Shown: one piece after another, positions 15,063 to 42,752 of the stretch
Numbering within the stretch: the stretch's first letter is position 1
How the letters are laid out: every line of letters starts with the position of its first letter
IMG/VR virus record: IMGVR_UViG_3300047560_000921
Coordinates: 124,001 to 188,000 of that record
Length of the DNA stretch: 64,000 nt
Strand: one strand, 5' to 3'
The notes under the pieces: generated by a model
The model's database searches: none
Seen by the model: only the letters and a program-made list of their open reading frames with translations
What the model was told of the DNA's origin: nothing
Made by a program: the position numbers and the translations under genes

Positions 15063-16241
15063 TTACCAAATATAGGGAAACAGTTGCTGGCTGTTTGTTT
15101 TCCTGATTGCGTCTAAGTCCGTTAAGTACTTACGGGTAGATTCTATTCCATTGCTGTGAGTTTTAAGCAAATTATCCACTAAATCAGGCATTTCAGAAGT
15201 TAAATTATGCTCTTTGAGCCATTGTCTGTGGAACTGAGTCATACGCCTTGCTTCGTCTCTATGTTCCATGGGCAGTAAATCAGCTTTTAAATTCTCTGGG
15301 AAACTGATAGTGTTGTATTGATAATTGTGTATGCCCGTAGCGGTGTAGATAGCACGTTCAATCTTGTCCAGGTCCAGGATGTTTAATATGCTAATGCTAG
15401 GGGTAATTTTAATGTCAATGTGTGGGCATTGGTTCTTAACCTGTGTTAAGTTTTCTAGTATTTGCTTCCAGCTGGCACCCCGACGAATGTAATCAAATCG
15501 GTCCCAGACGTTGTCTATGCTAACTAGCATACTGATATTGCTAAAGTTATTCCATAAGTCCAAGACATTCTTTTTCTTGTAGTTCAAGTTGGTTAAGTTT
15601 GTTATATAGGATATGTTAACTTGCTTTTTGTTTGCGGCAAAGTATTCTAGAATTTCATAGTGCTGATCCGTTACTAGTGGTTCCCCTCCGGCAAAGGTAA
15701 CGTTTTCTACGTCATCTAAATACTCTTCTTTTAACTGTTCCATAATGTCTAAACTTAATATTCTATCATGTCCGCTACTGCGTCCTAATTTAATCCAATC
15801 GCTATGCCATGTGCTACTAAACGTTGGGCCACAACTTACACAGGCCAAATTGCAAACGTTACTGAATCTAATGTCAAGATATTTAAGTTTAAAATCAGTA
15901 AAGTCTGTGGGGTGATATTTAAAGCTATTGATACGCATACTGTCCATACCAACAGCTTCTTGCTCATAGCATTTATAGCAAGTGTCTACAAGCTCACCCG
16001 CCAGCATTTTTTGTTTTATTTCTTTGAACTTGTCACCATTAACTATGTCTATGATTTTAGTTTGGTTTAAGTTACCAATGGGTTTAAGCGGATCACTCAA
16101 GCAACAAGGAAACGCTTTACCGTCGGGCCATGCATGTAAATGAACCCATGGTAAAGTGCAGATGCTTTTATTTGTAGTAGGATCTAAGGATCTCGTACCA
16201 CTCGGGGAAAGTGTCTTTAAAGCTCTGTTTACGATATTCAT
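15063..16241 (-). CDS. N-terminal twitch-domain radical SAM protein
   Basis: CTLPW..DGKAFPCC..CYKC twitch; CNLACVSC; FAGGEP. Confidence 0.9.
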   Translation of the reverse strand: MNIVNRALKTLSPSGTRSLDPTTNKSICTLPWVHLHAWPDGKAFPCCLSDPLKPIGNLNQTKIIDIVNGDKFKEIKQKMLAGELVDTCYKCYEQEAVGMDSMRINSFKYHPTDFTDFKLKYLDIRFSNVCNLACVSCGPTFSSTWHSDWIKLGRSSGHDRILSLDIMEQLKEEYLDDVENVTFAGGEPLVTDQHYEILEYFAANKKQVNISYITNLTNLNYKKKNVLDLWNNFSNISMLVSIDNVWDRFDYIRRGASWKQILENLTQVKNQCPHIDIKITPSISILNILDLDKIERAIYTATGIHNYQYNTISFPENLKADLLPMEHRDEARRMTQFHRQWLKEHNLTSEMPDLVDNLLKTHSNGIESTRKYLTDLDAIRKTNSQQLFPYIW

Positions 16242-17358
16242 CTTGTTCTTCGTTACGCTTCATAAACAAGCGCATCTTTTCTGGGTCTGGTTCACTGGCC
16301 ATGAAGTTTAATATTGGCAGTATCTCTGGCTGGTACTCTTGTAAAGGACTTAACTTCTTAACTAGAATTTCTTTAATAGCAGGATCTAATGCCGCAATGC
16401 TTTGGTCATAAGGTGCATGTAATATATTGTACCAAACGCTGGTACCAATGTTTTTTACAATCTCATTGGTAATTTCATCTAAGTAAAATATATTGTAGTT
16501 ACTTATAGTTGCGTTAGTACTTAATCTAATCCATGAATGTTCTTTGAACTGTAGTACATGGTCACGTACTCGTGCCCATTGGCTAGGATAACGTTGGTAA
16601 TGATGTCTATCGCCAATATCATCAACACTTACTTGTACATCTACCAGTTTAAACTGTTTCCACAATTCAATTTGTTCATCACTAGGCATGATACTGCCGT
16701 TGGTATTGTAGTGTATAGTTTGGCGTTTACTGTATCCTTTTTCCGCACTGTGCTCGAGTATGGTCCACATGTTTTCAATTAGCAATGGTTCACCGCCATA
16801 TAAGTCCATGTGTTCAATGTTAGGTAATGCTTGTTCTAAATTGTCCCAAATGTTTTGATCCTTTTTCCAAGCATCACGCATTTCCTTAAAGCTACGATGA
16901 AACTCTACTTTACTTTCAGTAGGTTTACGCAAGTCATACCATTCGTCAATCCACTGACTGCTATTCATAGGATTACATATACGACATTTTAAGTTGCACA
17001 AGTTACCCATCTTCAAGTCAACAATTTTAATAACATGTTCGCCGGGCATGATTGTTTTCTTGCCGTCTAGGTATTCTTTGCTGTCGCGCATACGCTTACT
17101 GTTTTGGCCAGCACGTTCTTCATCCCAACAACGTTTGCAGTTAGGATGCTTAAAGCCAATGTTCAAGTCTCTGCGTAGCTCGCTCATCCACTTACTGTCA
17201 AAGGCTTCCTGCATGTTGTCTATGCTGGGCTTAAATGGCGTACCGTCATCTTTTCTAATAGCCAGCTCGCTCATACAACATGTTTTGTAATGTCCGTCTG
17301 GCGTAGTGCTAATAGCCGCATTAGGATGAATACAGAATGTTTGTTTATTAATATACAT
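16168..17358 (-). CDS. N-terminal twitch-domain radical SAM protein
   Basis: CIHP..DGHYKTCC..CKRC; CNLKCRIC; YGGEP. Confidence 0.9.
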   Translation of the reverse strand: MYINKQTFCIHPNAAISTTPDGHYKTCCMSELAIRKDDGTPFKPSIDNMQEAFDSKWMSELRRDLNIGFKHPNCKRCWDEERAGQNSKRMRDSKEYLDGKKTIMPGEHVIKIVDLKMGNLCNLKCRICNPMNSSQWIDEWYDLRKPTESKVEFHRSFKEMRDAWKKDQNIWDNLEQALPNIEHMDLYGGEPLLIENMWTILEHSAEKGYSKRQTIHYNTNGSIMPSDEQIELWKQFKLVDVQVSVDDIGDRHHYQRYPSQWARVRDHVLQFKEHSWIRLSTNATISNYNIFYLDEITNEIVKNIGTSVWYNILHAPYDQSIAALDPAIKEILVKKLSPLQEYQPEILPILNFMASEPDPEKMRLFMKRNEEQDEYRKQSFKDTFPEWYEILRSYYK

Positions 17359-18571
17359 CGTACCATTCCTTAAACCATGGATGCAAGTCTAGTAAGTTTT
17401 GACGTCTATGTGAATCCATAAACTTCATACGCTTGATAAAGTCTTGCTTGTCTTGTTCACTGGGACTAGGTAGTGCGGCAATCTTTTCCAAACTCTTTAC
17501 CATGTTAGATAAAGCATAGTGTTCGCCGAACTTACTGTTAATGTGTTTGGCAGCATCTAAAGCAATACTAGCTCTAACTGAATCTGGTAGCACTTCGGGT
17601 CTCATACAAGTTGGATGATCCACGTTGATGACAAATATGTTAAAGTCTAGTTCGCCTACTAAAATGTCAGCAACCTTTTTCATGCTGGGCATAGTTAAGT
17701 TGCTTAGTGTAGTATGTATGCAAGTCTTGTTATTAGGACGTTGCTTAGACCAGTACTTTAGTTCTTGTAAGTTACTGTAAATCTTATCCCACTTAGCTGG
17801 CCAACGCACATACTCGTAGTATTCTTCCACACCGTCTATGCTGGCGTTTAAGTTTACTTCTTTAAAGTGGCTCCACTTGTCGTACCACTTGCTACCAATA
17901 GTAGTAATGTTACTGTTATACTCGAGCGAAATGTTTTTAGCAAAGTCTAGTTCAATTAGCAAGTCCAGAAACTCTTCTTGCTCGTCCATGATTAAAGGTT
18001 CGCCGCCAATGATGTATACGCTTTTTAAATCGTGCCCTTGTTCACGGACAACATCAAATAGTCTGCTACGCTTAACCCAACTAGTCTTCTCCAAGAAGTC
18101 CATGTCAACTTGTGTGTATGCATTGGCTGGGTCTTTGTTAATTTCCTGTGCTAGCAAACTGCTACTATACGGATGGCACATTCTACAAGCTAAGTTACAT
18201 TTGTTACCAAAGTCTAGTTCTAAACGTTCCAGCTTTACAGTGGCATCGCCTTGTAATAACTTATTGTAAGTCTCTGGGAATCTATATGTATTATTAATTT
18301 GTCTGTAGCTTTCAGCTTTGATGTCCTCTAGCTTCCAGCAACGTTCGCATTGTGCTGGTTTGTATCCTGCTAGCATAGTACTGCGTACTCGTTGCAATGC
18401 AGAATTGTGTTGCCATGTTAATTCAACTCGTTGCGTAACAGGAGCAGGCATATCGCTATTGCTAAGTCCACCATTGAGTGCATTACAACATAAACGCTGA
18501 TGCCCACTTTGCCCAATACTCAACGTATTAAAGGGCAGTACGCACAACGTATCATTTAACGTATTTTTCAC
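17348..18571 (-). CDS. N-terminal twitch-domain radical SAM protein
   Basis: CVLPF..GHQRLCC..CERC; CNLACRMC; IGGEP. Confidence 0.9.
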   Translation of the reverse strand: MKNTLNDTLCVLPFNTLSIGQSGHQRLCCNALNGGLSNSDMPAPVTQRVELTWQHNSALQRVRSTMLAGYKPAQCERCWKLEDIKAESYRQINNTYRFPETYNKLLQGDATVKLERLELDFGNKCNLACRMCHPYSSSLLAQEINKDPANAYTQVDMDFLEKTSWVKRSRLFDVVREQGHDLKSVYIIGGEPLIMDEQEEFLDLLIELDFAKNISLEYNSNITTIGSKWYDKWSHFKEVNLNASIDGVEEYYEYVRWPAKWDKIYSNLQELKYWSKQRPNNKTCIHTTLSNLTMPSMKKVADILVGELDFNIFVINVDHPTCMRPEVLPDSVRASIALDAAKHINSKFGEHYALSNMVKSLEKIAALPSPSEQDKQDFIKRMKFMDSHRRQNLLDLHPWFKEWYDVY

Positions 18572-19898
18572 AATCTTTTAAAAACTTTTCGTATTCTGGA
18601 AATGTAGACAAGAAATCGGTTCCTCGTCTGCGGTCATGCTCCATGAAGAATCTGTAGAAGTCTGCCTTGGCGTTTATTTCTCTAACCAATGACAATGTGT
18701 GTTTGCGGAAGTGACTGCGAACACGTTCTAGTCGTTCTATTTCAATAGCATTGAAACCTTTATTTAAATGCTCTTTCATAAATGCAATGTCTGCATCTAT
18801 GTAATGTACAAAGTCTGGAGGTAGTATTCCTATGCTCCAGTGGTCGGGCTCTTTAAGGTGCGGTGTAATAAACTCTACACGATTGCCGTAGAGCTGTCGC
18901 CATTCTAATATCTTTTTCAGTAACTGATTAAAGCTAGGCAATACCATGTTGTTGTATGTAACCATAATTTCAACACTGGCATTGATGTCCTTAAAGTTAT
19001 CCATTATAGTTTTAAAGTTCTGTTCCCATACGGCACAGTCTAATCCATAACGAATGTATTCAGCAGGCTTGCCCCAAGTATCTAAACTAACATGCATACG
19101 ATAATTCTTAATTGCACGTTTGCTTAACAATGTTTTAACACGTTCGCTTAATCGTTCTATTAACGCAGGCTTGACGCCCAAGTTACTATTGATTAGCAAT
19201 GTAAGATGCGGAGCAGGTTCTGCTTCTAACTTGTCTAACAGTTGCCATGTGTTTTGATTAAGCATGGGCTCACCGCCGGTAATGCGTAAAGTCTGTAAGT
19301 CTTTAATCAGTGTAGGCCACCAAGCCCAAAATGCTTTTACGTAAGGATTGTTTTCATCATCGCTTTCGTAGTATTCTCTGTCCTTGATAAAATCGATGCT
19401 GTATTGTTTTGTTAGTACAGGAAAGTTGCCATTGGTCTTAATGTCGTTGATCCAACTGTTGCTAACTGTGGGAGTGCAATAACCACACATAAAGTTACAA
19501 ACATTACCAAAGTTAACTTCGATGAACTTGGGGTTAAAATCATCAGTAGGACCTAAGCTACGCACAATGTCATAGACGTCCATGTCATTGGCACTGTTAA
19601 TAATCCTATCACTGATGTGTCCATTGTCTTCTACTTGCCAGCAAAAGTTACATTCTTCTGGACGCTTACCCGATAGCATTTGCTGTCTACGTTCTTGCTT
19701 GTGTGCAGTATTATGTAGGCCAGAAGGGCTACGCTTGATATCCTTAATATCAATCTTATGTGGGTGTGGATGATAACAACTATGGTTATCTCCTGTTTGC
19801 AAATACAATGTTTGCTGAGTCCATTTAAGTAAACAGAATCCTTGTCCTACTTGATCCAGTTTGGCTTTAACGGACTTTAGTCTATCTAGCTCATCCAT
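18552..19898 (-). CDS. N-terminal twitch-like radical SAM protein
   Basis: FCLLKW..NHSCYHP..CNFC; CNFMCGYC; TGGEP; likely start MDELD at 19898. Confidence 0.9.
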   Translation of the reverse strand: MDELDRLKSVKAKLDQVGQGFCLLKWTQQTLYLQTGDNHSCYHPHPHKIDIKDIKRSPSGLHNTAHKQERRQQMLSGKRPEECNFCWQVEDNGHISDRIINSANDMDVYDIVRSLGPTDDFNPKFIEVNFGNVCNFMCGYCTPTVSNSWINDIKTNGNFPVLTKQYSIDFIKDREYYESDDENNPYVKAFWAWWPTLIKDLQTLRITGGEPMLNQNTWQLLDKLEAEPAPHLTLLINSNLGVKPALIERLSERVKTLLSKRAIKNYRMHVSLDTWGKPAEYIRYGLDCAVWEQNFKTIMDNFKDINASVEIMVTYNNMVLPSFNQLLKKILEWRQLYGNRVEFITPHLKEPDHWSIGILPPDFVHYIDADIAFMKEHLNKGFNAIEIERLERVRSHFRKHTLSLVREINAKADFYRFFMEHDRRRGTDFLSTFPEYEKFLKDCEKYVK

Positions 19899-21195
19899 TT
19901 GTTTGTGTCTTGTGATGTTGGCTTCCCAGCTCACCGTTGTCTAGTTTGTTCCACTCTTTACCACAGCAAGTACTACATTGACGACTACGCATATTGTGTC
20001 CTTTGTATATACTGCGTGGCAGGAACCTATCAAAGAACTGTCCTTTAAGAACTTGGGCCAATGTGTTCTGGTGCAAGCTCAATGTATCCATACCGCCAGC
20101 AAGTTCAATCATTTGAATACTTGCATCATCGCTGATGTTCTTAAATGCCGCACCTTGCTTGGCAACTTCCCACGGTCTGTCGTCACTGATATGACGCCAT
20201 GGCTCGCCACCAATAAAGCAACATGGGAATACATGTCCGCTGGCACTGACAAAGATTTCGTTTAGTTGATTATTGCCGCCCTTTTCGTGATGCTGTGCTC
20301 TGCAACTAACTTCGATGTCATTGTGTTTGAACTTGACCCATTCGTTCTTTTCGTTGTCCCATTCTCTGTGCTCCAAACTAATTTGTTGCATCTTATCAAA
20401 CTCTTGATTAGTAATGTACATAGGAACAATACCAATAGTCTTTAGTTCTTTAAAGTTACTATCCCTAAAGTTTTCGTTGTCTGGTTGTTCTAATTTGTAT
20501 AGCACTTGCTTGTCTTTGTTAAGCACTTCGTAGAACCCGCGGCCAGCATCGTCCCACTTGTGCCAACGAGTAGTACGCTTAACGTTAAAGAACTCAAAGC
20601 CCAATTCATCTGCTAGTGCTCGTGCTTGTTCGACTTGATGTTCGTTATGTTTGAATACAATAAAGTCCCACTTGGCAACCCCACCAGCAGCCTTAAATGC
20701 TTTCATGTTAGCAAGGATCTTACTGAACTTAGTATTACGGCGATACAAGTGATTAGTGTCTTCTAACCCGTCCACACTAAACACGCAAAAGTCTCCACGC
20801 TCAAAGTTATTAACCACTTTACCTAGTTCAGTCCACCAAGCAGGTGTACGTGCGCTGGCATTGGTATGTAACGTAAGAGCCATGTCAGGATTATGTTCTC
20901 TCATGTACTTGAAGATTTCTAAACTGTCTTTGGCAACAATAGGGTCTCCGTAATTACCACATGCATACACACGCTTTAACTGCTTGACAAAGGCAGGTGG
21001 GAACCATGTTTTAAATTGTTCCAGGGTAATTTCAGTTTCTTGCACCTTAGGATTCATCTCTGCGCCGTTGTTAATATAACGTGGACACATAGGACAACCG
21101 GCATTACACTTGTCTGTTAGTTCTAAGTGCATACCTGTAATTTCGCCCGGGCCGTACAAGGCTGGCACATCATAGTTCATTAATCTCATTTCCAA
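19891..21195 (-). CDS. radical SAM protein with C-terminal SPASM/twitch domain
   Basis: CNAGCPMC; GNYGDP; C-terminal GHVFPCC...CSTCC. Confidence 0.9.
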   Translation of the reverse strand: MEMRLMNYDVPALYGPGEITGMHLELTDKCNAGCPMCPRYINNGAEMNPKVQETEITLEQFKTWFPPAFVKQLKRVYACGNYGDPIVAKDSLEIFKYMREHNPDMALTLHTNASARTPAWWTELGKVVNNFERGDFCVFSVDGLEDTNHLYRRNTKFSKILANMKAFKAAGGVAKWDFIVFKHNEHQVEQARALADELGFEFFNVKRTTRWHKWDDAGRGFYEVLNKDKQVLYKLEQPDNENFRDSNFKELKTIGIVPMYITNQEFDKMQQISLEHREWDNEKNEWVKFKHNDIEVSCRAQHHEKGGNNQLNEIFVSASGHVFPCCFIGGEPWRHISDDRPWEVAKQGAAFKNISDDASIQMIELAGGMDTLSLHQNTLAQVLKGQFFDRFLPRSIYKGHNMRSRQCSTCCGKEWNKLDNGELGSQHHKTQTNG

Positions 21196-22592
21196 TTCCT
21201 ATATACTTGTTCACACATATAAAAGAAGTCTGTGTATTCTGGGAAGGTAGCTAATAAGTTAGTACCTCTACGTTTGTCATGTTCTGTAAAGAACGTATAA
21301 AAATCTCTGCGCCCTTGTCTTATAACATCTGCATTTACTGGATTCTCTGCCATGTAATCAACTACACGCTTGAACTTTTCAATTTCTACTTTATCAAACC
21401 CATGCTTAAAGTCTGGCCTGCGTTCTCGATACTTCATATGACGCAAGTGGTCATACATATTGTCCAAGAAGTTCTTAGTTAAAATGTTAATCATCCAGTG
21501 AGGCGGTTCTTTTAAGTAAGGAGTATCAAAGCCAATGCGTTGGGTATACATGTTTTCCAGTGTACCGTATTCTTCTCTTAACGCTAGTATTTTGTCCAGT
21601 AACAATCTAAACTTAACTACACTAAGGACGTTAAATGTAATCATCAAATTGATTTTACTGTTTGGTACAGTGTCTAAGAATATACGTACATTCTTTTCCC
21701 ATAGCGCACAGTCTAAGCCATTACGCATATACTCTGCACGTTCACCCCAACTGTCAATGCTGGTAAACAGTCTAAAGTCTTTAATCTTTCCTTCTGCTAG
21801 CAACTTACTTACTTTCTCGCTCAGTTTCTCTACTAGGCTAGATTTCATGCCCAAGTTACTGTTGATATGTAATTGTAGCTCTGGCGCAGGATCTTCATCT
21901 AACATGTCTAACAGTTTAAACGTATTGCTATTAAGCAATGGCTCACCACCGGTGATCCGGAATACTTTTAAGTCCTTCTTTAGACTTGGCCACCACTCCC
22001 ACCATGCATCCACATAAGGGTTCGGCATATCAGGTTCGTAAAATACTCCGGCCTTTAAGAAGTCAATGCTGTACTGTTTGGTAGTAATGTCATAGTCGCC
22101 TTTGCGTTTGATTTCTTCCATCCATGCGCTACTAGCCTGTGGACAGCAGTATCCACATTTAAGTTGGCAAGCATTACCAAAGCTAACTTCAATGTGTCTG
22201 GGATTCCAATCTGCATCAGCATCTAAGTTTCTAATAGTGTCGTAGTCTTCGATAGCATAGTCACTGGTACTGTGTACAAATCTATCACTGATGTGGTCAC
22301 CTTGCAAGTCTTCGACGTTCCAACAGTAATAACATTCACTGGGACGTTCGCCTTCTAGCATTAGTTTGCGTTGTTGCTTTTTGTACTCTGTATTGTGTAG
22401 TCCACTAGGGCTTCTTTGTATATCTTCTATTTTAATCTTGTGTGGACGTGGATGGTAACAACTGTGGTTGTCGCCCATGTGCAAATACAATGTTTCCGTT
22501 TGCCATTTCATCAAGCAAAAGCCCTTGCCCACTGCATTGAGCTTTTCTTTTGTTTCTAATAGTTTGTCGTAATAGCTTTTAGGCTCTTGCAT
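21186..22592 (-). CDS. N-terminal twitch-like radical SAM protein
   Basis: FCLMKW..NHSCYHP..CYYC; CQLKCGYC; TGGEP; start reassigned to MQEPK (22592) because the longer ORF overlaps the next gene. Confidence 0.9.
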   Translation of the reverse strand: MQEPKSYYDKLLETKEKLNAVGKGFCLMKWQTETLYLHMGDNHSCYHPRPHKIKIEDIQRSPSGLHNTEYKKQQRKLMLEGERPSECYYCWNVEDLQGDHISDRFVHSTSDYAIEDYDTIRNLDADADWNPRHIEVSFGNACQLKCGYCCPQASSAWMEEIKRKGDYDITTKQYSIDFLKAGVFYEPDMPNPYVDAWWEWWPSLKKDLKVFRITGGEPLLNSNTFKLLDMLDEDPAPELQLHINSNLGMKSSLVEKLSEKVSKLLAEGKIKDFRLFTSIDSWGERAEYMRNGLDCALWEKNVRIFLDTVPNSKINLMITFNVLSVVKFRLLLDKILALREEYGTLENMYTQRIGFDTPYLKEPPHWMINILTKNFLDNMYDHLRHMKYRERRPDFKHGFDKVEIEKFKRVVDYMAENPVNADVIRQGRRDFYTFFTEHDKRRGTNLLATFPEYTDFFYMCEQVYRNWK

Positions 22593-24222
22593 TATAACTG
22601 TTCTCGCATTGTTTCCAATAGAGCTGTAGCTCTGGGAATGTCTTAACAAAGTTTGTACCTTTGCGATAATCATACTCTCTAAAGAAAGCATAAAAATCTC
22701 TACGCAATAATGCACGTTCGTTGTCAGTGTATGTACAACTCTTCATCCATGCAATGTTGCGTTTTAGTTTGTCTATTTCAAAATCTGCAAAGCCAATTAG
22801 TTCGCCGTGTACTGCTACACTGTTTGCTTCCATAAACTCAACTGCTTTATCTAAGATGCTGTGCATGTTAGCGGGCAAGTTTTGTATAGTTAACCAAACA
22901 GGAGTGCGTAGTGTAGGAATGTCAAACCATACACGTTGTCGGTCCCAGTAGTTATTAAACTCGGGATTCTTTTCTGGAATGTCCTTGAGACTGTTAACAT
23001 ACTTACGCATGTCTAAAATCATCTCTAAGTATTTTTGCAATCCAGGAACGCTTAATAGATTGAATGTGTTAATAAAATTAACAGTGGTCATATGAGTATC
23101 ATATAACACACGCTTAGTATTAGTTATCAGTGTATCATAGTTCATTCCATTGCGAATGTACTCTGCTTGTGCGCCATGACTGTCCACGCTTACATAAATG
23201 CCAATGTGTCTACACGCTTTTGTTCTAGTTAACTCGTAGCTAAAGCTACCGTCTGCGGGAACATGGTCAATGGTTGGCAAGCCATGTATCTGCAATCTAT
23301 GTAGTGTGTCTACATTAACTTGTGACTTGTTTAACACATGGCGCGGCCATTTAGTGTGACTTTTCTTTCCATTGTTAACTGCTATAACTGTGGCACTGGC
23401 ACTGTAGTTTTCGATGGCTTGTACGCTATTAACAAACTTGTCTAGTAAGTCTTGCGATGGCGGGCACATGTTGGTAGTAATACCAATCTCTAAATCACCC
23501 TTAGGGTTCGCCGCAATGTAATCTAAAACCTTAAACGTGTTCTTATCCATGAGTGGTTCGCCACCAGTCATACGGAATACAAGTAGTGTTTCATACAACT
23601 CAGGCCACCACTTCCAAAATGCCTCTACGTAAGGATTATCTCTGTTAGCTACCTTTAAGGGCATTAAGCCGTTGGCTTCTAATGCAGGGATAGCATTGTG
23701 TGGTGTACTAGTAGGATAAGGCCCGTACTCTTTAATTTCTTCTTCCCATGCAGTGCTTAAATGCGGACTGCAATAAGCGCATTTAAAGTTACAACTTTGA
23801 TTAAAGTTAACTTCTACATAAGTGGGGTTAGGTTCTAGATTACTGATACTATCGCGATAAGGCAACGCCCAGTGTTCGCTACTACGATAATGTCTATCGC
23901 TGGCACTGCCTTGTGCTTCTAAACTCCAGCAGTACGAACAACCTGCAGGCTTTTTACCCGCAAGCATTTGTTTTCGTTCTTCTATCTTTTGGTCAGTATT
24001 ATGTAATGCGCTAGGCCTGCGCTGTATTTGATCAATGCTAATTGCGTGAGTAGGCGGATGATAGCAACTGTGAGTTCTGCCATTGGTTAAATGTAGGCTG
24101 ACGTGGTACCATTTAGCCAAACACATGCTGTCACTTTGACTGTTAAGCCATTCAGTGCTAGACTCTCTTAGTTTGGCTACCTCAGTAGCGGTAAGTGGAT
24201 TTGTGTGTACGTATGGTCGCAT
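22579..24222 (-). CDS. N-terminal twitch-like radical SAM protein
   Basis: MCLAKW..THSCYHP..CSYC; CNFKCAYC; TGGEP. Confidence 0.9.
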   Translation of the reverse strand: MRPYVHTNPLTATEVAKLRESSTEWLNSQSDSMCLAKWYHVSLHLTNGRTHSCYHPPTHAISIDQIQRRPSALHNTDQKIEERKQMLAGKKPAGCSYCWSLEAQGSASDRHYRSSEHWALPYRDSISNLEPNPTYVEVNFNQSCNFKCAYCSPHLSTAWEEEIKEYGPYPTSTPHNAIPALEANGLMPLKVANRDNPYVEAFWKWWPELYETLLVFRMTGGEPLMDKNTFKVLDYIAANPKGDLEIGITTNMCPPSQDLLDKFVNSVQAIENYSASATVIAVNNGKKSHTKWPRHVLNKSQVNVDTLHRLQIHGLPTIDHVPADGSFSYELTRTKACRHIGIYVSVDSHGAQAEYIRNGMNYDTLITNTKRVLYDTHMTTVNFINTFNLLSVPGLQKYLEMILDMRKYVNSLKDIPEKNPEFNNYWDRQRVWFDIPTLRTPVWLTIQNLPANMHSILDKAVEFMEANSVAVHGELIGFADFEIDKLKRNIAWMKSCTYTDNERALLRRDFYAFFREYDYRKGTNFVKTFPELQLYWKQCENSYNARA

Positions 24223-33822: not shown

Positions 33823-34926
33823 TTACAGAATGTTGGGGTTTACACCCACTTGAACTAGCCTGTTGCGTATGGTTTCTTCCATGCTGGCAGCGATTTCATC
33901 ATCTTCGCGCCACATGTCGTCGAAGTTTAAGTCAGCATTTTCTAGAATTCCTAACTTGGCAAATGTCTTAGTGATTCTAGGAGTTAACAAGCCAATGTCC
34001 TTGATGATAGGAACAATGCGGCTCATCATGTGCTTTTTGACTTTGTGGTAAGCAACGTTTTCTTTAATCTGACGGCCAACATCTTTCATGTCCAAGTGAT
34101 GGTCCAGGATTTCGTTAAAGTCTAAACGTGCATACAGCCACATAACACAAGCAATCAAATAGTCCTCGCGGTCCATTAGTTCTTGCGGGGTTAGGCTCTT
34201 ATAAAAGTCTTTAAGAATGTAACGTCCAAATGCAATATGTCTGGCTTCGTCCTGCATGATATAAGCTAACATACTTTTAGCCAATGGGTTAGAAGCATTG
34301 TCACGCATTAGTTGCATACTACCGATACCCCACCCTTCTGCTACAACGTGACTATTAAGGAACACTAAGTCCCACTTGTCGCTTTTAAACGCAATTTCAT
34401 ACATCTTCATCAAGCTACGCTGTACAGGACGTACCATGTCAATGCGGTGTGCAAACTTACCAAACGCTTCGATGTGACGACTTTCGTCAATGGCCTGTGT
34501 AGTAGCTAGCCACTTAGCATCATGATCTGGTGCGCTTTCGATAATCTTAGCCGCACTAATCATAGCACCTTGCTCACCGTGAATAAAGGCCCCAATCAAG
34601 TAAGCATTATAATCGTAGACAATATCGTCTCTAGTCTTTTGACTTAGCTTGCCCCATAGCTCAGTGCCATATAAAGGAACAATAGTTTCGTCAATACCCA
34701 TTGGATTGCGTGGGTCTGTTTCAATGGACCAATCAATTCTAGTTTGTGCGTCCCACTGCTCTCGCTTACTTTTTTCGTACAGTGCTAGCAGTTCTTTTCT
34801 ATGGTCGTTGTATTCCCAGCTGAAGTTGGTGGGACAGCCATTGGCAATTTCCCAGTTCATTTGATAGCCAGCAGGTAGCTGGCTTTGTGTTGTGTGTGGA
34901 CCCAATGGGTGCTGTCTGTTTGTCAT
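33823..34926 (-). CDS. ferritin-like diiron oxygenase (AurF-like family)
   Basis: HGEQG...DESRH...EGWG...DEARH paired ExxH diiron ligands; YEKSKREQWDAQTRIDW. Confidence 0.8.
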   Translation of the reverse strand: MTNRQHPLGPHTTQSQLPAGYQMNWEIANGCPTNFSWEYNDHRKELLALYEKSKREQWDAQTRIDWSIETDPRNPMGIDETIVPLYGTELWGKLSQKTRDDIVYDYNAYLIGAFIHGEQGAMISAAKIIESAPDHDAKWLATTQAIDESRHIEAFGKFAHRIDMVRPVQRSLMKMYEIAFKSDKWDLVFLNSHVVAEGWGIGSMQLMRDNASNPLAKSMLAYIMQDEARHIAFGRYILKDFYKSLTPQELMDREDYLIACVMWLYARLDFNEILDHHLDMKDVGRQIKENVAYHKVKKHMMSRIVPIIKDIGLLTPRITKTFAKLGILENADLNFDDMWREDDEIAASMEETIRNRLVQVGVNPNIL

Positions 34927-34931
34927 AGTGT

Positions 34932-35555
34932 TTAGTCGGGTAAAATTTGATCAGGTGGTAGTGTAACAGCCACAGGGCACATTGGACGATTCATATGCTC
35001 GATTACTGTATTGCCGTGTCTGGCTCCCCACATTTGTTGGCTAAGGAAATTAATAGCTACGTACCATGAACCCGCAGGATTGTTAACTACAGTCTTGATT
35101 TTCAAGTCGTCGTTTAGCATAATGCAAGTGGTAAATGGTAAAGTTTCCACTAATTCGTCGGCATCGTTGTATAACTCCAGCACCATGTCATCGCAGCCTG
35201 CAACAGGAATAAACAATGTTACACGTAAATGATGCCAAATCCTTAATTGCAGATTTGCACGTTGATTAGCTACATGTTGTTTAGTTTCTTTTGAAATTTC
35301 AACAATGGGGTAATCTTGCTGTGGTAATCCAAATATTTGGAAATATGCAGGATGGATAGTATTGTTGCCGGCTAGTAACTGTGCAGGTTCCCAGGATGTA
35401 AGAGAATAGTAAAATTCTTCAGGCTGGCGTGTTTTAAACACTGGCACTTCACTAAAGGTATTAGTTTCGATAGGCGTATGTACGTACAAATCAGCCATCA
35501 TTTGCTGAAATTCTGCTAATTTGTGTAAGGCAATTCTTCTATAGTTATTCTGCAT
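34932..35555 (-). CDS. hypothetical protein
   Basis: 207-aa ORF directly behind a sigma70 promoter. Confidence 0.6.
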   Translation of the reverse strand: MQNNYRRIALHKLAEFQQMMADLYVHTPIETNTFSEVPVFKTRQPEEFYYSLTSWEPAQLLAGNNTIHPAYFQIFGLPQQDYPIVEISKETKQHVANQRANLQLRIWHHLRVTLFIPVAGCDDMVLELYNDADELVETLPFTTCIMLNDDLKIKTVVNNPAGSWYVAINFLSQQMWGARHGNTVIEHMNRPMCPVAVTLPPDQILPD

Positions 35556-35566
35556 GTTAAAATCCC

Positions 35567-35595
35567 ATTATATAGTATTTACCTGGATTCGTCAA
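35567..35595 (-). promoter_or_regulatory. sigma70-type promoter
   Basis: TTGACG-N17-TATAAT, with TAAATA inside the spacer. Confidence 0.7.
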
Positions 35596-35897
35596 CTCTT
35601 TTTGGGCATTGGGTCTTCGCCTGTCATGTCCTGGCGTGCAAACCATAACTTGAACCATTCATCTGTACCTGGACGAATGTTATGTTGTTGTTGATACTGT
35701 GCTTTGTTTGGTATTTTAGGTATGCTTGCAGAATCGCGTTTTTCTGTAAGTTTGTCCATGATGCCTAACGTGTCAATGCCTGCGGATTTTTTAAGTTCTG
35801 CTAGCACACTAGGGTCAACATAAGCATCTGGAATAGAAGGATCGTCGCCTTGCAAACGGAAAGTATCACTGGTAATTTTGTATTGTTTCATAGTCAT
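35592..35897 (-). CDS. hypothetical phage protein
   Basis: C-terminal IRPGTDEWFKLWF motif; start reassigned to avoid overlap with the upstream gene. Confidence 0.65.
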   Translation of the reverse strand: MTMKQYKITSDTFRLQGDDPSIPDAYVDPSVLAELKKSAGIDTLGIMDKLTEKRDSASIPKIPNKAQYQQQHNIRPGTDEWFKLWFARQDMTGEDPMPKKS

Positions 35898-35904
35898 ATT
35901 TAAG

Positions 35905-37935
35905 TTACCATTGGCCTTTGGTGGTATACCTGTACACAAAACTAAAGTCCATATTCTTACGTTGCTCGAGTAACTCTAAATGTCGATCCCGTTCCTTGTC
36001 ATCGTAGATAACTTGTCCTGTACTACCAGGCACTGCTAAACGCCTAGCCCTGCTAGCCGCGACGCTGGTTGCAGTGGAAAAATCGTTGAAACTCCAAGCA
36101 TTGTCTGCTTGCGTAAACTTATAAGAAAAGTCAGCGGTCCACTGCCCTTGTTCGTCGATATCAAACTGTATGTTGGAAATAAAATTACTGCTCAAGTTCC
36201 AACCGAACTCCATGGAATCTTGTTGTGGATCAAACATTAAGTTTAACTTAAACGCACCCCTAGTTCTCCACAGTATACGCAATAATGGCCATACTTCATT
36301 GACTACCGAGTCGGCAAACGCACCTTGCCCTGTGCTACAGATATTAAAGTCAAACTGCTCAAATTCTATTTCTTTTACACTGTCATTGGCAAACGATAGT
36401 GTGTAAGACTTTTTAATGTTAGGGCGGCTAGTGTAATCGTGTTGATCCTTGTTTACTAAGTGTATAAGCAATATGTTAAAAATCTTTAAACGTATTAGCC
36501 TATGTACTTTACTGTTAGCATAATCGTTGGTGATCCAGTTGTTTTCAAAATAGTTTTTGGCAACATCAAATTTGCCCACTGCCTGCGCTATAATAGTGTC
36601 GGGCGGAATAATAAATCCCATGCCTGGTGCAATACTACTAATCTTGTTGTTTCTGTTACGCCATGCTAGTTGCATACTGTCATACAAGTCTTGTGGGCGT
36701 TCGGTAGGAAAACCAATAATCCAGTTAGTAAATGCTTCTACGCCTACGCTGGCACCGTCACGTAAGTTTTGCTCTATTTCGTCTACAGTAACACCCTTGT
36801 CCATGTCCCGCAGTACTTTATTGGAACCCGACTCGATACCATAGTTTAAACTAAAACATCCGGAGTCCGCTAAGTCCTTGTAATAGTCCAAGTCCATTCG
36901 GCCATCGCAACGAGCATATCCTGTCCAGTGTAGCTTCATACCACGTGCTACTACACCTTTGGCAAATGCTCTAAGCTCTTTAAGGTTGCCGTTAACTAGA
37001 CTGTCAATGAACCATATAACATCTGTGCCACGATTGTAGTATAAGTCTACTAGCTCTTCTATAATGTTCCTAGCCATTCTGCCGCGATATTTCCAGTAAT
37101 GTGTTTCGCTACAGAACACACATTTGGCTGTACACCCCCTGCTAATTTCAGCATTAACGCCATTGGGCATTGTATAATCAGTAACTGGGAAATGGCTATA
37201 ATCTGGGCTAGGCAAGCTGTCTAAGTCTAGTCGCTGGCCGTCAGTTTGTTTAAACCATACTGGACGAGGTTTGGCCACACCTGCTTCGATTTCTCCTAAG
37301 GCTTCCAATAACATTTTCTCGCCTTCACCGGATACAATGTAATCGTATTCCTTGGGTGGTTCCCAGTAGCTTTGGTGGCAACTAGGTCCACCAACCATTA
37401 TAATGACATCGGGCAGTCTGCGTTTAAGTTCTTGTGCCATCCACAAGCTGGCTTGTTCATTGCAGTAGTAAAGTGTAAGCCCTACTACAGTTGGATTAAT
37501 TGCAACAATTTTATCTACATATTGTTGCAGGAATGGTTCTACATGCGGTTTTAGTTCTTGCTCATAGTGTGGTGTGCGCCACTTCCAATCTCTATTACCG
37601 GCCCATGGATTATAATCAAGTCCCCATGAGCTATGGTCTTGGTAGGCTTTGGCATTCAAATCAAATGCATGAGTTTCAAAACCTGCGGCTTTGGTAATTG
37701 CAGCCAAACGTGCAACATTATATGGGGGAAAGTTGTGTGCCCATTCTGGTAACAGTAAAAATACTATACTAGTTTTTCTACTAATATAATTAATGTCTAC
37801 TGGAGTTAAGTTACTTTGTGGGACTGCCCTAGCATAGGGCATGATAGCTTCTAGTGCAAGCCTATGCTTTTCGTCATAGTCTTCTTCTACTCGTTTAACG
37901 GGATTTAGGTTTCGAATCTCAAAGAGTTTTTTCAT
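35905..37935 (-). CDS. cobalamin-binding (class B-like) radical SAM protein
   Basis: B12-binding segment VVGLTLYY...IMVGGPS; SRGCTAKCVFC; GIESGS; IIGFPTE. Confidence 0.9.
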   Translation of the reverse strand: MKKLFEIRNLNPVKRVEEDYDEKHRLALEAIMPYARAVPQSNLTPVDINYISRKTSIVFLLLPEWAHNFPPYNVARLAAITKAAGFETHAFDLNAKAYQDHSSWGLDYNPWAGNRDWKWRTPHYEQELKPHVEPFLQQYVDKIVAINPTVVGLTLYYCNEQASLWMAQELKRRLPDVIIMVGGPSCHQSYWEPPKEYDYIVSGEGEKMLLEALGEIEAGVAKPRPVWFKQTDGQRLDLDSLPSPDYSHFPVTDYTMPNGVNAEISRGCTAKCVFCSETHYWKYRGRMARNIIEELVDLYYNRGTDVIWFIDSLVNGNLKELRAFAKGVVARGMKLHWTGYARCDGRMDLDYYKDLADSGCFSLNYGIESGSNKVLRDMDKGVTVDEIEQNLRDGASVGVEAFTNWIIGFPTERPQDLYDSMQLAWRNRNNKISSIAPGMGFIIPPDTIIAQAVGKFDVAKNYFENNWITNDYANSKVHRLIRLKIFNILLIHLVNKDQHDYTSRPNIKKSYTLSFANDSVKEIEFEQFDFNICSTGQGAFADSVVNEVWPLLRILWRTRGAFKLNLMFDPQQDSMEFGWNLSSNFISNIQFDIDEQGQWTADFSYKFTQADNAWSFNDFSTATSVAASRARRLAVPGSTGQVIYDDKERDRHLELLEQRKNMDFSFVYRYTTKGQW

Positions 37936-37960
37936 AGTGATACATTATATATCACTATAA

Positions 37961-38935
37961 TCACTTGCGAATTGTACGAACCTTACTAACTTTCTTAACC
38001 GGATCTTTATGAACAACTTTCTTTACCTTGTGCGTAATTGGATCACGTTGGTAAACAAAGTAATGCTCGCCATGTTTAACAGGAACACCCAGTGTTACGT
38101 CTCTGCCCATATACTTGGCTTCGTCTAAGCCCTCTTCTTTTTCTACGAAATGATTACCGTCACCGTCTAGTTGAATAATCTCGTCAATGAAGTCTTTTGC
38201 ATTAGTAATAAACTCATCATAGTCAGTGACATTAGTCATGTCTGTCTTGGTATACACCATACCGTCTAAGGAATATTCTACATCAGTAAATTCGCCAGGG
38301 AATATGAATACTGAACCTTTACGGACACGCCCTTTGTCATGGAATACAAAGTGAGCTTGCCTTGCACCGCTGTCCCCGTCATCTTCGTCCCCGTCATCAC
38401 CTGGGGCAAATTCATTTAATGAACTTTCTGCACCTTCATCGAACACACGGCCACCAAAACCTCTAGCAGGTTCACGAGTGTCAGGCACACCTGCTCTGCT
38501 TGGTCGTTTACCTGGATTAGCATCCTTCCACTTCTGGACTCGTTGTTTTTGTGCAGGAGTAAGTTCGTCAGGTGATACACGGGTACCATCGTCCCACTCC
38601 CATTTACCACGCTTGTTATTGAAGCTAAGACCTTCCGCCACACCTTTTTTGGCAAAGCCGCTATTGTGGAAACTACCTTCAATAAACCATTCGCAGTCGT
38701 CATCGTTTACTTTGACATTAAGCACGTGAACACTGTAGCCTTGATCTTCTAACCATGATTGCGCTTCTTGGATCATGTGTTGTTTAGACACAGCACCGCT
38801 GACATCTAAATCGTTCCACCAGCCATCGCCTACTAAGTCAGTCATTTGGTCGTCAGTGTACCAACGTCCTGATTCACCGTTACCCGGTGCAAATTCGTTT
38901 AAGTTTCGTTTTTGTGAAAATTCTCTATAGCGCAT
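37961..38935 (-). CDS. putative internal head protein, acidic, with repeated LNEFAPG
   Basis: MRYREFS leader; LNEFAPG twice, GVAEG, GLDEAKY. Confidence 0.65.
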   Translation of the reverse strand: MRYREFSQKRNLNEFAPGNGESGRWYTDDQMTDLVGDGWWNDLDVSGAVSKQHMIQEAQSWLEDQGYSVHVLNVKVNDDDCEWFIEGSFHNSGFAKKGVAEGLSFNNKRGKWEWDDGTRVSPDELTPAQKQRVQKWKDANPGKRPSRAGVPDTREPARGFGGRVFDEGAESSLNEFAPGDDGDEDDGDSGARQAHFVFHDKGRVRKGSVFIFPGEFTDVEYSLDGMVYTKTDMTNVTDYDEFITNAKDFIDEIIQLDGDGNHFVEKEEGLDEAKYMGRDVTLGVPVKHGEHYFVYQRDPITHKVKKVVHKDPVKKVSKVRTIRK

Positions 38936-38942
38936 ATGAAAA

Positions 38943-38971
38943 AACCCTTGATATTTTATTTATCAAGGGTT
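38943..38971. terminator. 11-bp perfect inverted repeat containing an ATAAATA box
   Basis: AACCCTTGATA-N7-TATCAAGGGTT, followed by a T-run on the minus strand; ATAAATA at 38957-38963. Confidence 0.6.
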
Positions 38972-39389: not shown

Positions 39390-40403
39390 ATGGCAGATAT
39401 ACCATTAACCAATTTAGACAATACACTTTATTACGATGCCAATGGCCTGATCTGCCAACGTGTGGGCATTAGCGGCGGGTCAGTAAGCATCACCGGCCCC
39501 GTGACAATTCCAGGAACTGTAACCGTACAAAGCTCACCTTCTGATCCTGTGCATGTTCACTTAACTGAAATGGGTGCAGTTGATTTAACAGCCGCAACAG
39601 CATTACCTATTAGCAGAACAACAGCACCAAACAGCACAACAAATAGACTTTACGTTAGTCAAGAAACAGATGCAGTTCTAGCAGATAGTAACTATTTCTT
39701 CAACGTTGCAAGGAACAAGATTCCGGGACATAAAGTCGTTGTACGCAATGCGTTTAACCCTAGTGTGCCACAAGACACTGAAACATCAGTTTGGGTAGAA
39801 GGCGGCATCTACCCTCACGGTGCTTGGACAACAGCACAGAAACTATACGTAATTTCCACAAGTGCCGCAGACACAGGACAAAGCATTTATATCGAAGGCT
39901 TAGATGCCAACTACAATATTCAAACAGAAATTGTCACTACCAGTGGCTTAACTGCGGTATCTACTACTAAAAACTTCTTAAGAATCTACACTGCTACTGT
40001 GGTTAGTGCAAGTAGCAACAGTGCTAATGCAGGCGAAATTACATTCCGTTTAGGTAGCGGTACCGGCACTGTGGTAGCACATATACGCACAGGCTTTGGT
40101 GTTACTAAGCTAAGTCAATATACTGTACCTGCAGGAAAGACTGCTTATATTATCTACGGTGCGGCAACTAGCTTCCGCGGCGGCTCAGGCAACATTGGTA
40201 GCCAAATCCGTATGATGGTTAGACCATACGGCGGCTCGTTTATTATGGCTTATATTGCTGAAGTAGTTAACGGGCAGTATCGTGATGACTTTACTGCACC
40301 AATGGAAGTACCTGCAAAGGCTGACATTGATGTTCGTTGTATGGCTGACAGCAACGGCAGTGTGTTCAGCGCAACCTACGAAATCATTCTTATAGACAAT
40401 TGA
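39390..40403 (+). CDS. putative virion structural protein
   Basis: Thr/Ser/Gly-rich beta protein; TAAATA box and AGGAG RBS upstream. Confidence 0.6.
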   Translation: MADIPLTNLDNTLYYDANGLICQRVGISGGSVSITGPVTIPGTVTVQSSPSDPVHVHLTEMGAVDLTAATALPISRTTAPNSTTNRLYVSQETDAVLADSNYFFNVARNKIPGHKVVVRNAFNPSVPQDTETSVWVEGGIYPHGAWTTAQKLYVISTSAADTGQSIYIEGLDANYNIQTEIVTTSGLTAVSTTKNFLRIYTATVVSASSNSANAGEITFRLGSGTGTVVAHIRTGFGVTKLSQYTVPAGKTAYIIYGAATSFRGGSGNIGSQIRMMVRPYGGSFIMAYIAEVVNGQYRDDFTAPMEVPAKADIDVRCMADSNGSVFSATYEIILIDN

Positions 40404-41403: not shown

Positions 41404-41767
41404 TTTTTGTAACAACTTTCCAAGAGCCCCAACAATGTTTGACGCCCTCACTCTTAACAATCCAATCAATAGTAACAATAGCCAACTTTACGTTATCGCA
41501 ATTGAACTCAATGGTAAGTGGCACGTTGACTTTTACAGGCCGACTAAACTTCAAATCCATTTTTGCACTTAATGCATACTTGATGTCTTTAAAGTATTCT
41601 TGTTCTGTAAATTTGCTCCACACTAACCATTGGGGTAGTTTGCTGATAATAAAGCCGCCTTGCACTACACCGTGAACTACGTGAATTTCCTGGTCGTCAC
41701 CGCTGATACGTGCAAAGTCCTGCACTTGCTCTAGCGTAAAACAGTCCGTGGCAATAAATGTAGTCAT
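41390..41767 (-). CDS. MaoC-like hot-dog fold dehydratase/hydratase
   Basis: FARISGDDQEIH (D-x4-H hydratase motif), LKFSRPV. Confidence 0.75.
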   Translation of the reverse strand: MTTFIATDCFTLEQVQDFARISGDDQEIHVVHGVVQGGFIISKLPQWLVWSKFTEQEYFKDIKYALSAKMDLKFSRPVKVNVPLTIEFNCDNVKLAIVTIDWIVKSEGVKHCWGSWKVVTKNDTK

Positions 41768-42468: not shown

Positions 42469-42752
42469 ACGCTAGTACTGGCTTCAATGGTAAAATCAAA
42501 GGGTAATTTTGCCAATAGCTTTTTGGATATTACATCGCCGTCAATTTTACTTAGGTCACTGCTCAGTGGTATATCATAGCAATGTTCCATGTCACGTTCG
42601 TGATAAACCATTACAGCACCGTCTGCTTGCTGACTAATTAACTTGCCCACAGGACTGTCAAATACAATTTTGAAAAATGACTTTAGTGTGTCTTTGTCTA
42701 GTTCTTGATCCGATACTAGTCTAATAAAATGGTTAAATTCTTCTGCTATCAT
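42465..42752 (-). CDS. hypothetical protein
   Basis: 95-aa ORF, coupled to the upstream gene. Confidence 0.65.
   Translation of the reverse strand: MIAEEFNHFIRLVSDQELDKDTLKSFFKIVFDSPVGKLISQQADGAVMVYHERDMEHCYDIPLSSDLSKIDGDVISKKLLAKLPFDFTIEASTSV

What the first reader, a model, noticed from the sequence alone, without database searches (positions are those of the whole stretch)
35905..37935. Cobalamin-dependent radical SAM enzyme in a phage, with a leader-like N-terminal extension
Seen: a B12-binding domain plus SRGCX3CX2C, preceded by about 45 residues starting MKKLFEI...VEEDYDE, located among the leader-bearing genes. Established: class B radical SAM enzymes methylate unactivated carbons or P/S atoms, often in RiPPs and natural products. 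Inference: a possibly packaged or virion-modifying methyltransferase that requires a B12-containing host.
Basis: partly seen in the sequence, partly recalled or inferred. Interest (0 to 1): 0.65.

Follow-up and report, generated by a model that had tools for sequence, protein, structure and literature searches.

The report
Phage B12-dependent radical SAM tailoring enzyme
The gene encodes a real cobalamin-type radical SAM enzyme from a large, almost phage-only family that most likely tailors a sugar in a phage glycan pathway, and its "leader" is a conserved part of the enzyme rather than a packaging signal.

Summary
Window 35905-37935 (-) is a 676-aa ORF. It has a B12-binding domain, a radical SAM core with SRGCTAKCVFC, and about 55 residues ahead of the first Rossmann strand. 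The start codon is forced.

The window lies in a 231-kb T4-like jumbo phage. The gene does sit among genes with a shared MRxxE[L/F] N-terminus on unrelated proteins. That pattern matches T4 internal proteins with a capsid-targeting sequence.

The enzyme's own N-terminus is different:
- Residues 19-55 are conserved across more than 100 homologues, including a homologue on a Halobacteriovorax-labelled MAG contig.
- Residues 1-18 carry a family motif (K-I-x-x-I-K) that some homologues place internally.
- Related phages that keep MRAxEF leaders on other proteins have unrelated N-termini on this enzyme.

Packaging is therefore unlikely, at about 0.1.

In 64 of 79 related phage loci the gene sits within 8 kb of other radical SAM genes (mostly N-twitch type), sugar-nucleotide enzymes, or both. 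These enzymes include DegT, RmlC-like, UDP-glucose dehydrogenase and carbamoyltransferase; SGNH-like proteins are frequent neighbours too. In this phage the N-twitch array lies 12 kb away.

Best reading: a class B radical SAM tailoring enzyme, probably a C-methyltransferase, acting on a phage-made sugar or glycan. The substrate is unproven. The C-terminal domain has no known fold match.

The parts
35905..37935 (-). Complete gene for the 676-aa cobalamin-type radical SAM enzyme (P0001), stop codon included
   Evidence: ORF list and translation. More than 1500 homologues, with full-length identity of 47-87% among those listed.
37771..37935 (-). N-terminal element, residues 1-55. Residues 1-18 are variable and carry the family motif K-[IL]-x-x-[IL]-[KR]. 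Residues 19-55 are strongly conserved (D-x-K-H ... P-Y-A ... Q-x-N-L-T).
   Evidence: Alignments A1 and A2 with per-column conservation. pLDDT 78-89. Conserved in the Halobacteriovorax MAG homologue from residue 21 onward.
37246..37770 (-). Rossmann-type cobalamin-binding domain, about residues 56-230
   Evidence: Pfam PF02310 is above its cutoff. The model shows alternating strands and helices. Foldseek matches OxsB, TokK, TsrM and CysS.
36652..37161 (-). Radical SAM core, about residues 259-428, including the G-x-E-S-G-S block
   Evidence: Pfam PF04055. Invariant columns in A2.
37111..37134 (-). CX3CX2C motif for the [4Fe-4S] cluster: C268, C272 and C275
   Evidence: Translation. Invariant in 118 sequences.
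35908..36648 (-). Family-specific C-terminal alpha/beta domain, residues 430-676, with no recognisable relative
   Evidence: The domain model has pLDDT 93.9. The best Z against 48,161 PDB representatives is 4.6, which is within noise. The Atlas search was uninformative.
37934..37958 (-). Short hairpin (7-bp perfect stem, 7-nt loop) that abuts and overlaps the start codon. No Shine-Dalgarno sequence is visible.
   Evidence: Sequence and inverted repeat I2. Its function was not tested.
15063..24222 (-). Array of seven tandem radical SAM genes, six of them N-twitch type. This is the probable pathway partner of the enzyme. Homologues of these genes sit in one operon with the enzyme in most related phages.
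   Evidence: Pfam and NCBIfam NF033640 scores of 295-326 bits against a cutoff of 170. Synteny clusters c2 and c7.

Best explanation
The gene encodes a class B (cobalamin plus [4Fe-4S]) radical SAM enzyme that acts in the infected cell's cytoplasm. It most likely tailors a sugar or glycan intermediate made by a phage-encoded pathway. The probable mechanism is inferred from the enzyme class. The reduced cluster cleaves SAM to a 5'-deoxyadenosyl radical. That radical abstracts a hydrogen from an unactivated carbon of the substrate. The substrate radical then takes a methyl group from methylcobalamin, and a second SAM re-methylates the cobalamin. The pathway partners are the N-twitch radical SAM enzymes (encoded 12 kb away in this phage), glycosyltransferase-like proteins and sugar-nucleotide enzymes. 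Cobalamin must come from the host. The 55-residue N-terminal segment is an integral, conserved part of the enzyme. It is not a cleavable leader. What is shown: domain architecture, fold class, conserved motifs, the forced start codon, family-wide conservation of the N-terminus, and synteny with other radical SAM and sugar enzymes. What is inferred: cobalamin binding, methyl transfer, a sugar substrate, and the final destination of the product.
For: Domains and motif. Fold: the full model has pLDDT 91.5, and the top Foldseek matches are OxsB, TokK, TsrM, CysS, AprD4 and MgmA. Family size and range: more than 1500 homologues and 311 IMG/VR loci. Among 185,579 prokaryote species genomes, only three MAGs hold a full-length or near-full-length relative. 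Synteny across 79 phage loci: other radical SAM genes lie within 8 kb in 51 loci, sugar enzymes in 39, and one or both in 64. The neighbours are usually on the same strand, and in the loci read gene by gene they abut or overlap the enzyme gene. Identified partners are N_Twi_rSAM, carbamoyltransferase, DegT aminotransferase, dTDP-4-dehydrorhamnose 3,5-epimerase-like, UDP-glucose/GDP-mannose dehydrogenase, a TPP E1-like protein, DUF6492, and SGNH/DUF6071 proteins. Four phage records whose copy of the gene has no adjacent N-twitch gene were searched whole. All four still carry N-twitch radical SAM genes elsewhere, with 2 to 21 matches per record. The same holds for this genome. Two distant cellular B12 radical SAM relatives (26-29% identity) sit in clusters with a CMP-sugar cytidylyltransferase. 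One of them also has epimerase, DegT, NTP-transferase and carbamoyltransferase genes. N-terminus.
Against: No substrate was identified. The best NCBIfam matches are peptide (RiPP) C-methyltransferases (ApyD at 122 bits, TIGR03975 at 112 bits), not sugar enzymes, although both are far below their cutoffs. In this phage and its closest relatives the gene is not next to sugar genes. It sits in the internal-protein-like locus beside an AurF-like oxygenase. Not all class B enzymes are methylases: OxsB and BchE are not, and AprD4 does not use cobalamin. The synteny survey had no negative control, because phages that have N-twitch arrays but lack this enzyme were not counted. Only two cellular loci were inspected. 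Fatty-acid-desaturase-like genes lie next to the radical SAM array and next to the second B12 radical SAM gene, which leaves a lipid substrate open.
Confidence: 0.5

Rival explanations
1. The enzyme is an internal (ejection) protein. Its N-terminus would act as a T4-style capsid-targeting sequence, the prohead protease would cut it off at about E17/E18, and the enzyme would be packaged and injected with the DNA or act inside the virion.
For: The gene lies inside a locus of genes with a shared MRxxE[L/F] N-terminus on otherwise unrelated proteins. That is the pattern described for T4 internal proteins (PMC3012670). The phage has a T4-type head maturation protease, portal and major head protein. 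MKKLFEI resembles MRLFELF if one residue is inserted. The conserved part of the enzyme begins just after a possible V-E-E site. From my own knowledge, the T4 Alt enzyme (about 680 aa) is packaged.
Against: The strict leader pattern is not met, because one residue is inserted. The acidic residue that every strict leader carries is lost in the 74%-identical homologue, which starts MKHLFNV. The N-terminal motif is ancestral to the family, and one subclade places it 5-14 residues from the start. Related phages keep MRAxEF-type leaders on other proteins while their copy of this enzyme starts quite differently. In most relatives the gene lies in biosynthetic operons rather than internal-protein loci. 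The model predicts an ordered N-terminus. An oxygen-labile Fe-S and cobalamin enzyme is a poor candidate for storage in a virion (inference).
Confidence: 0.1
2. The enzyme is a peptide or protein C-methyltransferase of the RiPP or proteusin type. It would modify a phage structural protein, an internal protein or a small peptide, perhaps together with the N-twitch radical SAM enzymes.
For: The two best NCBIfam matches are RiPP C-methyltransferases, ApyD and TIGR03975. Among known families, one N-twitch paralogue also hits SPASM/twitch peptide maturases weakly. A small ORF of about 99 aa directly follows the gene in this phage and in L002/L003.
Against: Scores are far below family cutoffs (122 against 750, and 112 against 282). 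No small ORF is a conserved same-strand neighbour across the 79 loci: the conserved same-strand partners have median lengths of about 180 aa or more, and several are sugar-nucleotide enzymes. The small ORF is found only in the two closest relatives. No RiPP recognition element was seen; the N-terminus has only two short helices.
Confidence: 0.17
3. The enzyme modifies a nucleotide or the phage DNA, or alternatively a lipid, rather than a sugar.
For: By eye, the genome carries QueC/D/E-like genes, which suggests 7-deazaguanine DNA (not tested). Fatty-acid-desaturase-like genes flank the radical SAM array and the second B12 radical SAM gene. The third-best NCBIfam hit is a lipid-biosynthesis B12 radical SAM family.
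Against: Neither nucleotide-modification genes nor the desaturase-like genes are conserved neighbours of the enzyme in related loci. The conserved neighbours that could be identified are sugar-nucleotide enzymes.
Confidence: 0.13

Closest known systems
Structurally characterised class B radical SAM enzymes: TokK, CysS, TsrM, OxsB
   Same: An N-terminal Rossmann cobalamin domain followed by a radical SAM core with CX3CX2C. These are the top fold matches (Foldseek E 1e-12 to 1e-14). A profile of the family hits TokK and CysS by sequence.
   Different: Identity is only 14-17%. This family has an extra conserved 55-residue N-terminal element and a 43-residue insertion in the cobalamin domain. Its C-terminal domain matches nothing in the PDB. 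It is found almost only in phages.
RiPP C-methyltransferases ApyD (NF050148) and TIGR03975
   Same: These are the best-scoring curated families (E 3e-35 and 3e-32) over residues 127-424.
   Different: Scores are far below the cutoffs. Only the core domains align. No conserved precursor-peptide gene was found.
Sugar C-methylating class B enzymes of aminoglycoside pathways, such as GenK and GenD1 (from my own knowledge)
   Same: The proposed role is the same: radical methylation of an unactivated sugar carbon within a cluster of aminotransferases, epimerases and other radical SAM enzymes. The phage operons have that composition.
   Different: The pathway is encoded by a phage, and its product and target are unknown.
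T4 internal proteins and Alt, which carry a capsid-targeting sequence
   Same: The neighbouring genes show the T4 pattern of a short conserved N-terminus on unrelated cargo, and a T4-type head protease is present (PMC3012670).
   Different: The enzyme itself fails the leader pattern, and its N-terminus travels with the enzyme family rather than with the phage's leader.

Membership tests
Class B (cobalamin-dependent) radical SAM enzymes | Rossmann-type cobalamin-binding domain N-terminal to the radical SAM core | tested here: met
   PF02310 scores 36.2 bits against a cutoff of 32.1. The fold matches OxsB, TokK, TsrM and CysS.
Class B (cobalamin-dependent) radical SAM enzymes | CX3CX2C cluster motif and SAM-binding blocks in a partial TIM barrel | tested here: met
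   C268, C272 and C275 and the G-x-E-S-G block are invariant in 118 sequences. PF04055 scores 56.7 bits.
Class B (cobalamin-dependent) radical SAM enzymes | Cobalamin is actually bound and used, as in methyl transfer | not testable with these tools
   This needs purified protein (UV-vis, LC-MS of the cofactor) and an activity assay. AprD4 shows that the fold alone does not prove cobalamin use.
RiPP C-methyltransferases (ApyD NF050148; TIGR03975) | Score above the curated family cutoff | tested here: not met
   121.9 bits against 750, and 112.1 bits against 281.85.
RiPP C-methyltransferases (ApyD NF050148; TIGR03975) | A conserved neighbouring precursor-peptide gene | tested here: not met
   No small ORF is a conserved same-strand neighbour among 79 loci. 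The roughly 99-aa ORF downstream occurs only in L002/L003.
T4-type internal proteins with a capsid-targeting sequence | The phage's own leader, M[RK]xx[ED][LF], at the extreme N-terminus | tested here: not met
   It fits only with a one-residue insertion. Two other ORFs in the genome fit that loose pattern.
T4-type internal proteins with a capsid-targeting sequence | The leader is shared within the phage while the cargo is variable and lineage-specific | tested here: not met
   The cargo is conserved in hundreds of phages, and its N-terminus co-varies with the cargo. Other phages with MRAxEF leaders have different N-termini on this enzyme.
T4-type internal proteins with a capsid-targeting sequence | Presence in virions and cleavage by the prohead protease | not testable with these tools
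   This needs virion proteomics.

The most novel reading that the evidence does not exclude
In this lineage, a sugar-pathway enzyme has been captured by the hypervariable internal-protein locus. Its N-terminus has drifted toward the phage's capsid-targeting leader. A cobalamin and Fe-S radical enzyme would then be packaged in the head and injected with the DNA, able to act on a host target before any phage gene is expressed.
Probability: 0.08. Interest if true: 0.85.

Novelty: new variant of a known kind. Interest (0 to 1): 0.5.

Why it matters
Class B radical SAM enzymes perform chemically difficult methylations and rearrangements, and few have known substrates. This is a large, well-conserved family found almost only in phages. 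It has a distinct N-terminal element and a C-terminal domain of unknown fold. It is tied by synteny to arrays of N-twitch radical SAM enzymes and sugar-nucleotide enzymes in jumbo and huge phages. If the proposed role holds, these phages build a heavily radical-tailored sugar. That would make infection depend on host cobalamin, iron-sulfur supply and low-potential reductants. This is relevant to phage ecology and to the discovery of new sugar chemistry. The neighbouring leader-bearing genes are also a candidate set of injected proteins in a T4-like lineage that has not been studied.

Tried and rejected
- Megablast of the locus against 50,697 phage records found nothing. tblastn found only Streptomyces phage SF3, at 29% identity over the core.
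- The immediate neighbours are the AurF-like oxygenase, the 207-aa protein, the roughly 99-aa ORF and the 324-aa leader protein. They are conserved only in the two closest relatives, so they cannot define the function of the family.
- The C-terminal domain was folded alone and searched against 48,161 PDB representatives. The best Z was 4.6, which is noise. The Atlas feature search was uninformative.
- PDB sequence searches with the c4 partner protein and with an N-twitch paralogue gave nothing useful.
- A search for the T4 late promoter TATAAATA upstream of the locus genes found it at only one gene, and the motif is depleted genome-wide. No timing inference was possible.
- Literature searches found no paper on this family. 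The only related remarks were that eight radical SAM genes in one Aeromonas giant phage are 'highly unusual' (PMC12390700), and that pelagimyophages carry radical SAM cassettes in their host-recognition cluster (PMC7029224).
- The large representative protein search was not run, because no claim here rests on absence of relatives.
- Model coordinates are not exposed, so contacts of the N-terminal segment could not be measured. Only pLDDT was available.

Full report
**The observation**

Window 35905-37935 on the minus strand is a 676-aa ORF, P0001. Pfam finds a B12-binding domain (residues 132-211, above its cutoff) and a radical SAM domain (263-423, E 4.5e-15). The motif SRGCTAKCVFC lies at residues 265-275.

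The start codon is fixed. A TAA lies four codons upstream of the ATG at 37935. No other in-frame start codon occurs before Met32, and Met32 falls inside a block that is conserved across the family. The extension is therefore translated. In the AlphaFold2 model (mean pLDDT 91.5, pTM 0.90) the first Rossmann strand is at residues 56-61, so the extension is about 55 residues long.

**Genome context**

The window is part of a single 231,384-bp phage contig with 41% GC. The phage has a T4-family DNA polymerase. Its nearest cultured relatives by that protein are Sinorhizobium phage Phosso and Agrobacterium phage Atu_ph07, at 47-51% identity. It also has a T4-type portal, head maturation protease and major head protein.

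**The leader-bearing genes**

Eleven ORFs in the genome start M[RK]xx[ED][LFI], and a twelfth carries the motif at Met5. Nine of these twelve lie within about 20 kb around P0001. One more is a 75-aa protein in the head module. Beyond the first 6-10 residues these proteins share no significant similarity.

The closest relatives, L002 and L003 (83% identity for the enzyme), carry nine leader-bearing genes each, and the set is partly different from this phage's. A short shared N-terminus on variable cargo is the pattern described for T4 internal proteins and their capsid-targeting sequence (PMC3012670).

**The enzyme's N-terminus is not that leader**

- MKKLFEI fits the leader pattern only with an inserted residue. 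Two other ORFs in the genome fit that loose pattern as well.
- In an alignment of 118 homologues, residues 19-55 are strongly conserved. Examples are A30 at 92%, P33 at 89%, Q40 at 96%, and N42, L43 and T44 at 96-97%.
- Residues 1-18 are variable but follow a family motif, with consensus x-x-K-I-x-x-x-x-K. One subclade places that motif 5-14 residues from the N-terminus.
- The acidic residue carried by all twelve leader-bearing ORFs is already lost in the 74%-identical homologue, which starts MKHLFNV.
- Other phages that carry the enzyme keep MRAxEF or MRIxEL leaders on other proteins, while their copy of the enzyme starts quite differently. An example is L001 with P0033.
- A 45-46% identical homologue lies on a contig of a Halobacteriovorax MAG. 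By eye that contig is flanked by dnaX-, ybaB- and tadA-like genes. The homologue aligns from residue 21 onward at 41% identity over the N-terminal region.
- The model gives the first 50 residues pLDDT 78-89, which suggests an ordered segment.
- The second B12 radical SAM enzyme of the same genome (515 aa, 23% identical) lacks the extension.

Together these points make the N-terminus an integral element of this enzyme family. Packaging through a capsid-targeting sequence remains possible for this lineage only, and I put it at about 0.1.

**What the enzyme is**

NCBIfam's best matches are ApyD and TIGR03975, both RiPP C-methyltransferases. Next come lipid, P-methyl, BchE and hopanoid B12 radical SAM families. 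All are far below their cutoffs. Foldseek's best matches are OxsB, TokK, TsrM, CysS, AprD4 and MgmA at 14-17% identity. A profile of the family hits MgmA, TokK and CysS by sequence.

The three cluster cysteines and the G-x-E-S-G block are invariant. The C-terminal 247 residues fold confidently (pLDDT 93.9) but match nothing among 48,161 PDB representatives, with a best Z of 4.6.

The protein is therefore a class B radical SAM enzyme of an uncharacterised subfamily.

**Distribution**

The word-based search scored more than 1500 homologues. Those listed are full-length at 47-87% identity. IMG/VR holds 311 confirmed loci. Among one genome for each of 185,579 prokaryote species, only three MAGs hold a full-length or near-full-length relative. 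Everything else is at most 31% identical over part of the protein only. The cultured-phage collection holds only one distant hit.

**Function by association**

I called ORFs in 81 related loci and clustered the proteins. The window's own neighbours are conserved only in L002 and L003.

Across the 79 loci that carry the enzyme:
- 53 have N-twitch radical SAM genes (NF033640) within 8 kb.
- 40 have a DUF6071/SGNH-like protein.
- 39 have a protein family I call c4.
- 29 have a further radical SAM family.
- 18 have a carbamoyltransferase.
- 16 have a DegT-type aminotransferase.
- 9 have a dTDP-4-dehydrorhamnose epimerase-like protein.
- 8 have a TPP E1-like protein.
- UDP-glucose/GDP-mannose dehydrogenase and DUF6492 proteins also occur.

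The neighbours are mostly on the same strand as the enzyme gene, and in the loci read gene by gene they abut or overlap it. Restricted to loci that carry the enzyme, 51 have other radical SAM genes, 39 have sugar enzymes, and 64 of 79 have one or both.

In this genome the same families are dispersed. Six N-twitch genes and one further radical SAM gene lie at window 15063-24222. The c4 family, another N-twitch gene and the c10 family lie after the tail-fibre genes at genome 94.6-100.6 kb.

Four phage records in which the enzyme gene stands alone all carry N-twitch genes elsewhere, with 2 to 21 matches per record.

Two distant cellular relatives sit in clusters with a CMP-sugar cytidylyltransferase. 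One of them also has epimerase, DegT, NTP-transferase and carbamoyltransferase genes.

The most economical reading is a radical tailoring step, probably C-methylation, on a sugar made by a phage-encoded pathway. I do not know whether the product decorates virion proteins, DNA or the host surface.

**Limits**

- No substrate is identified.
- The nearest curated families act on peptides.
- The synteny survey lacks negative controls.
- Only two cellular loci were examined.
- Desaturase-like neighbours leave a lipid substrate open.
- Cobalamin binding is inferred from sequence and fold only.
- No paper in the searchable library describes this family.

**Verdict**

The class B assignment is supported. 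The leader and packaging interpretation is not supported. The enzyme belongs to a large family found almost only in phages, with family-specific N- and C-terminal parts, and synteny links it to sugar tailoring. I rate it a new variant of a known kind, with interest 0.5.

Noticed in passing
window 15063-24222 (-): Seven radical SAM genes lie in tandem (392, 396, 407, 460, 434, 509 and 547 aa). Six score 295-326 bits on NF033640, the N-terminal twitch radical SAM family (cutoff 170). Related huge phages carry up to 21 matches to this family in one record.
   Followed up: partly
window 24269-24661, 29437-29898, 29977-30828, 30825-31364, 31364-32518, 32528-33772, 37961-38935, 42749-43387, 43384-44325 (all -): Nine genes begin ATG-AGA or ATG-CGC and encode MRxxE[L/F] N-termini on otherwise unrelated proteins. 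One of these proteins has a GP88 domain and one has DUF6934. The locus looks like a hypervariable internal-protein locus with a T4-like capsid-targeting sequence.
   Followed up: partly
window 37961-38935 (-): The 324-aa leader-bearing protein contains the heptad L-N-E-F-A-P-G twice, at residues 12-18 and again mid-protein. These may be two cleavage sites for the head protease (read).
   Followed up: no
window 33823-35891 (-): An AurF-like diiron oxygenase (PF11583, E 3e-21), a 207-aa protein with no family match, and a roughly 99-aa ORF that starts 8-14 nt after the enzyme's stop form a block with the enzyme. The block is conserved only in L002 and L003.
   Followed up: partly
window 24678-25421 (-); L082 12232-14546 (genome 103232-105546): A fatty-acid-desaturase-family gene sits next to the radical SAM array. 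A second B12-type radical SAM gene (515 aa) elsewhere in the genome also has a desaturase-family neighbour.
   Followed up: no
window 26524-26964 (-): By eye, the N-terminus of this 146-aa ORF looks like a Dps or ferritin-like iron-storage protein. That would suit a phage with so many Fe-S enzymes. No tool was run on it.
   Followed up: no
window 40390-41478 (-): A UvdE-type UV endonuclease (PF03851, E 3e-35) lies near the enzyme gene here and also in L001, L002, L003 and L051.
   Followed up: no
window 37934-37958 and 38943-38971: A short hairpin overlaps the enzyme's start codon. Just upstream of the 324-aa gene there is a perfect 11-bp stem with a 7-nt loop, followed by a run of T on the coding strand, which looks like a terminator.
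   Followed up: no
L083 (Halobacteriovorax MAG contig, 80.6 kb): A 45-46% identical homologue of the enzyme sits with several genes that look by eye like N-twitch radical SAM genes. The cluster is flanked by dnaX-, ybaB- and tadA-like genes, which would make this a cellular copy of the module in a predatory bacterium, unless the contig is mis-binned.
   Followed up: partly
window 51334-54407 (-): A 750-aa ATP-dependent protease (phrog_4871, E 4e-252) is followed by an ORF whose N-terminus looks like a DnaJ J-domain by eye.
   Followed up: no
genome 123744-124616, 200251-200754, 73335-73970 (outside or at the edge of the window): ORFs whose N-termini look like QueE, QueD and QueC suggest a 7-deazaguanine DNA modification pathway. 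This was read by eye and not tested.
   Followed up: no
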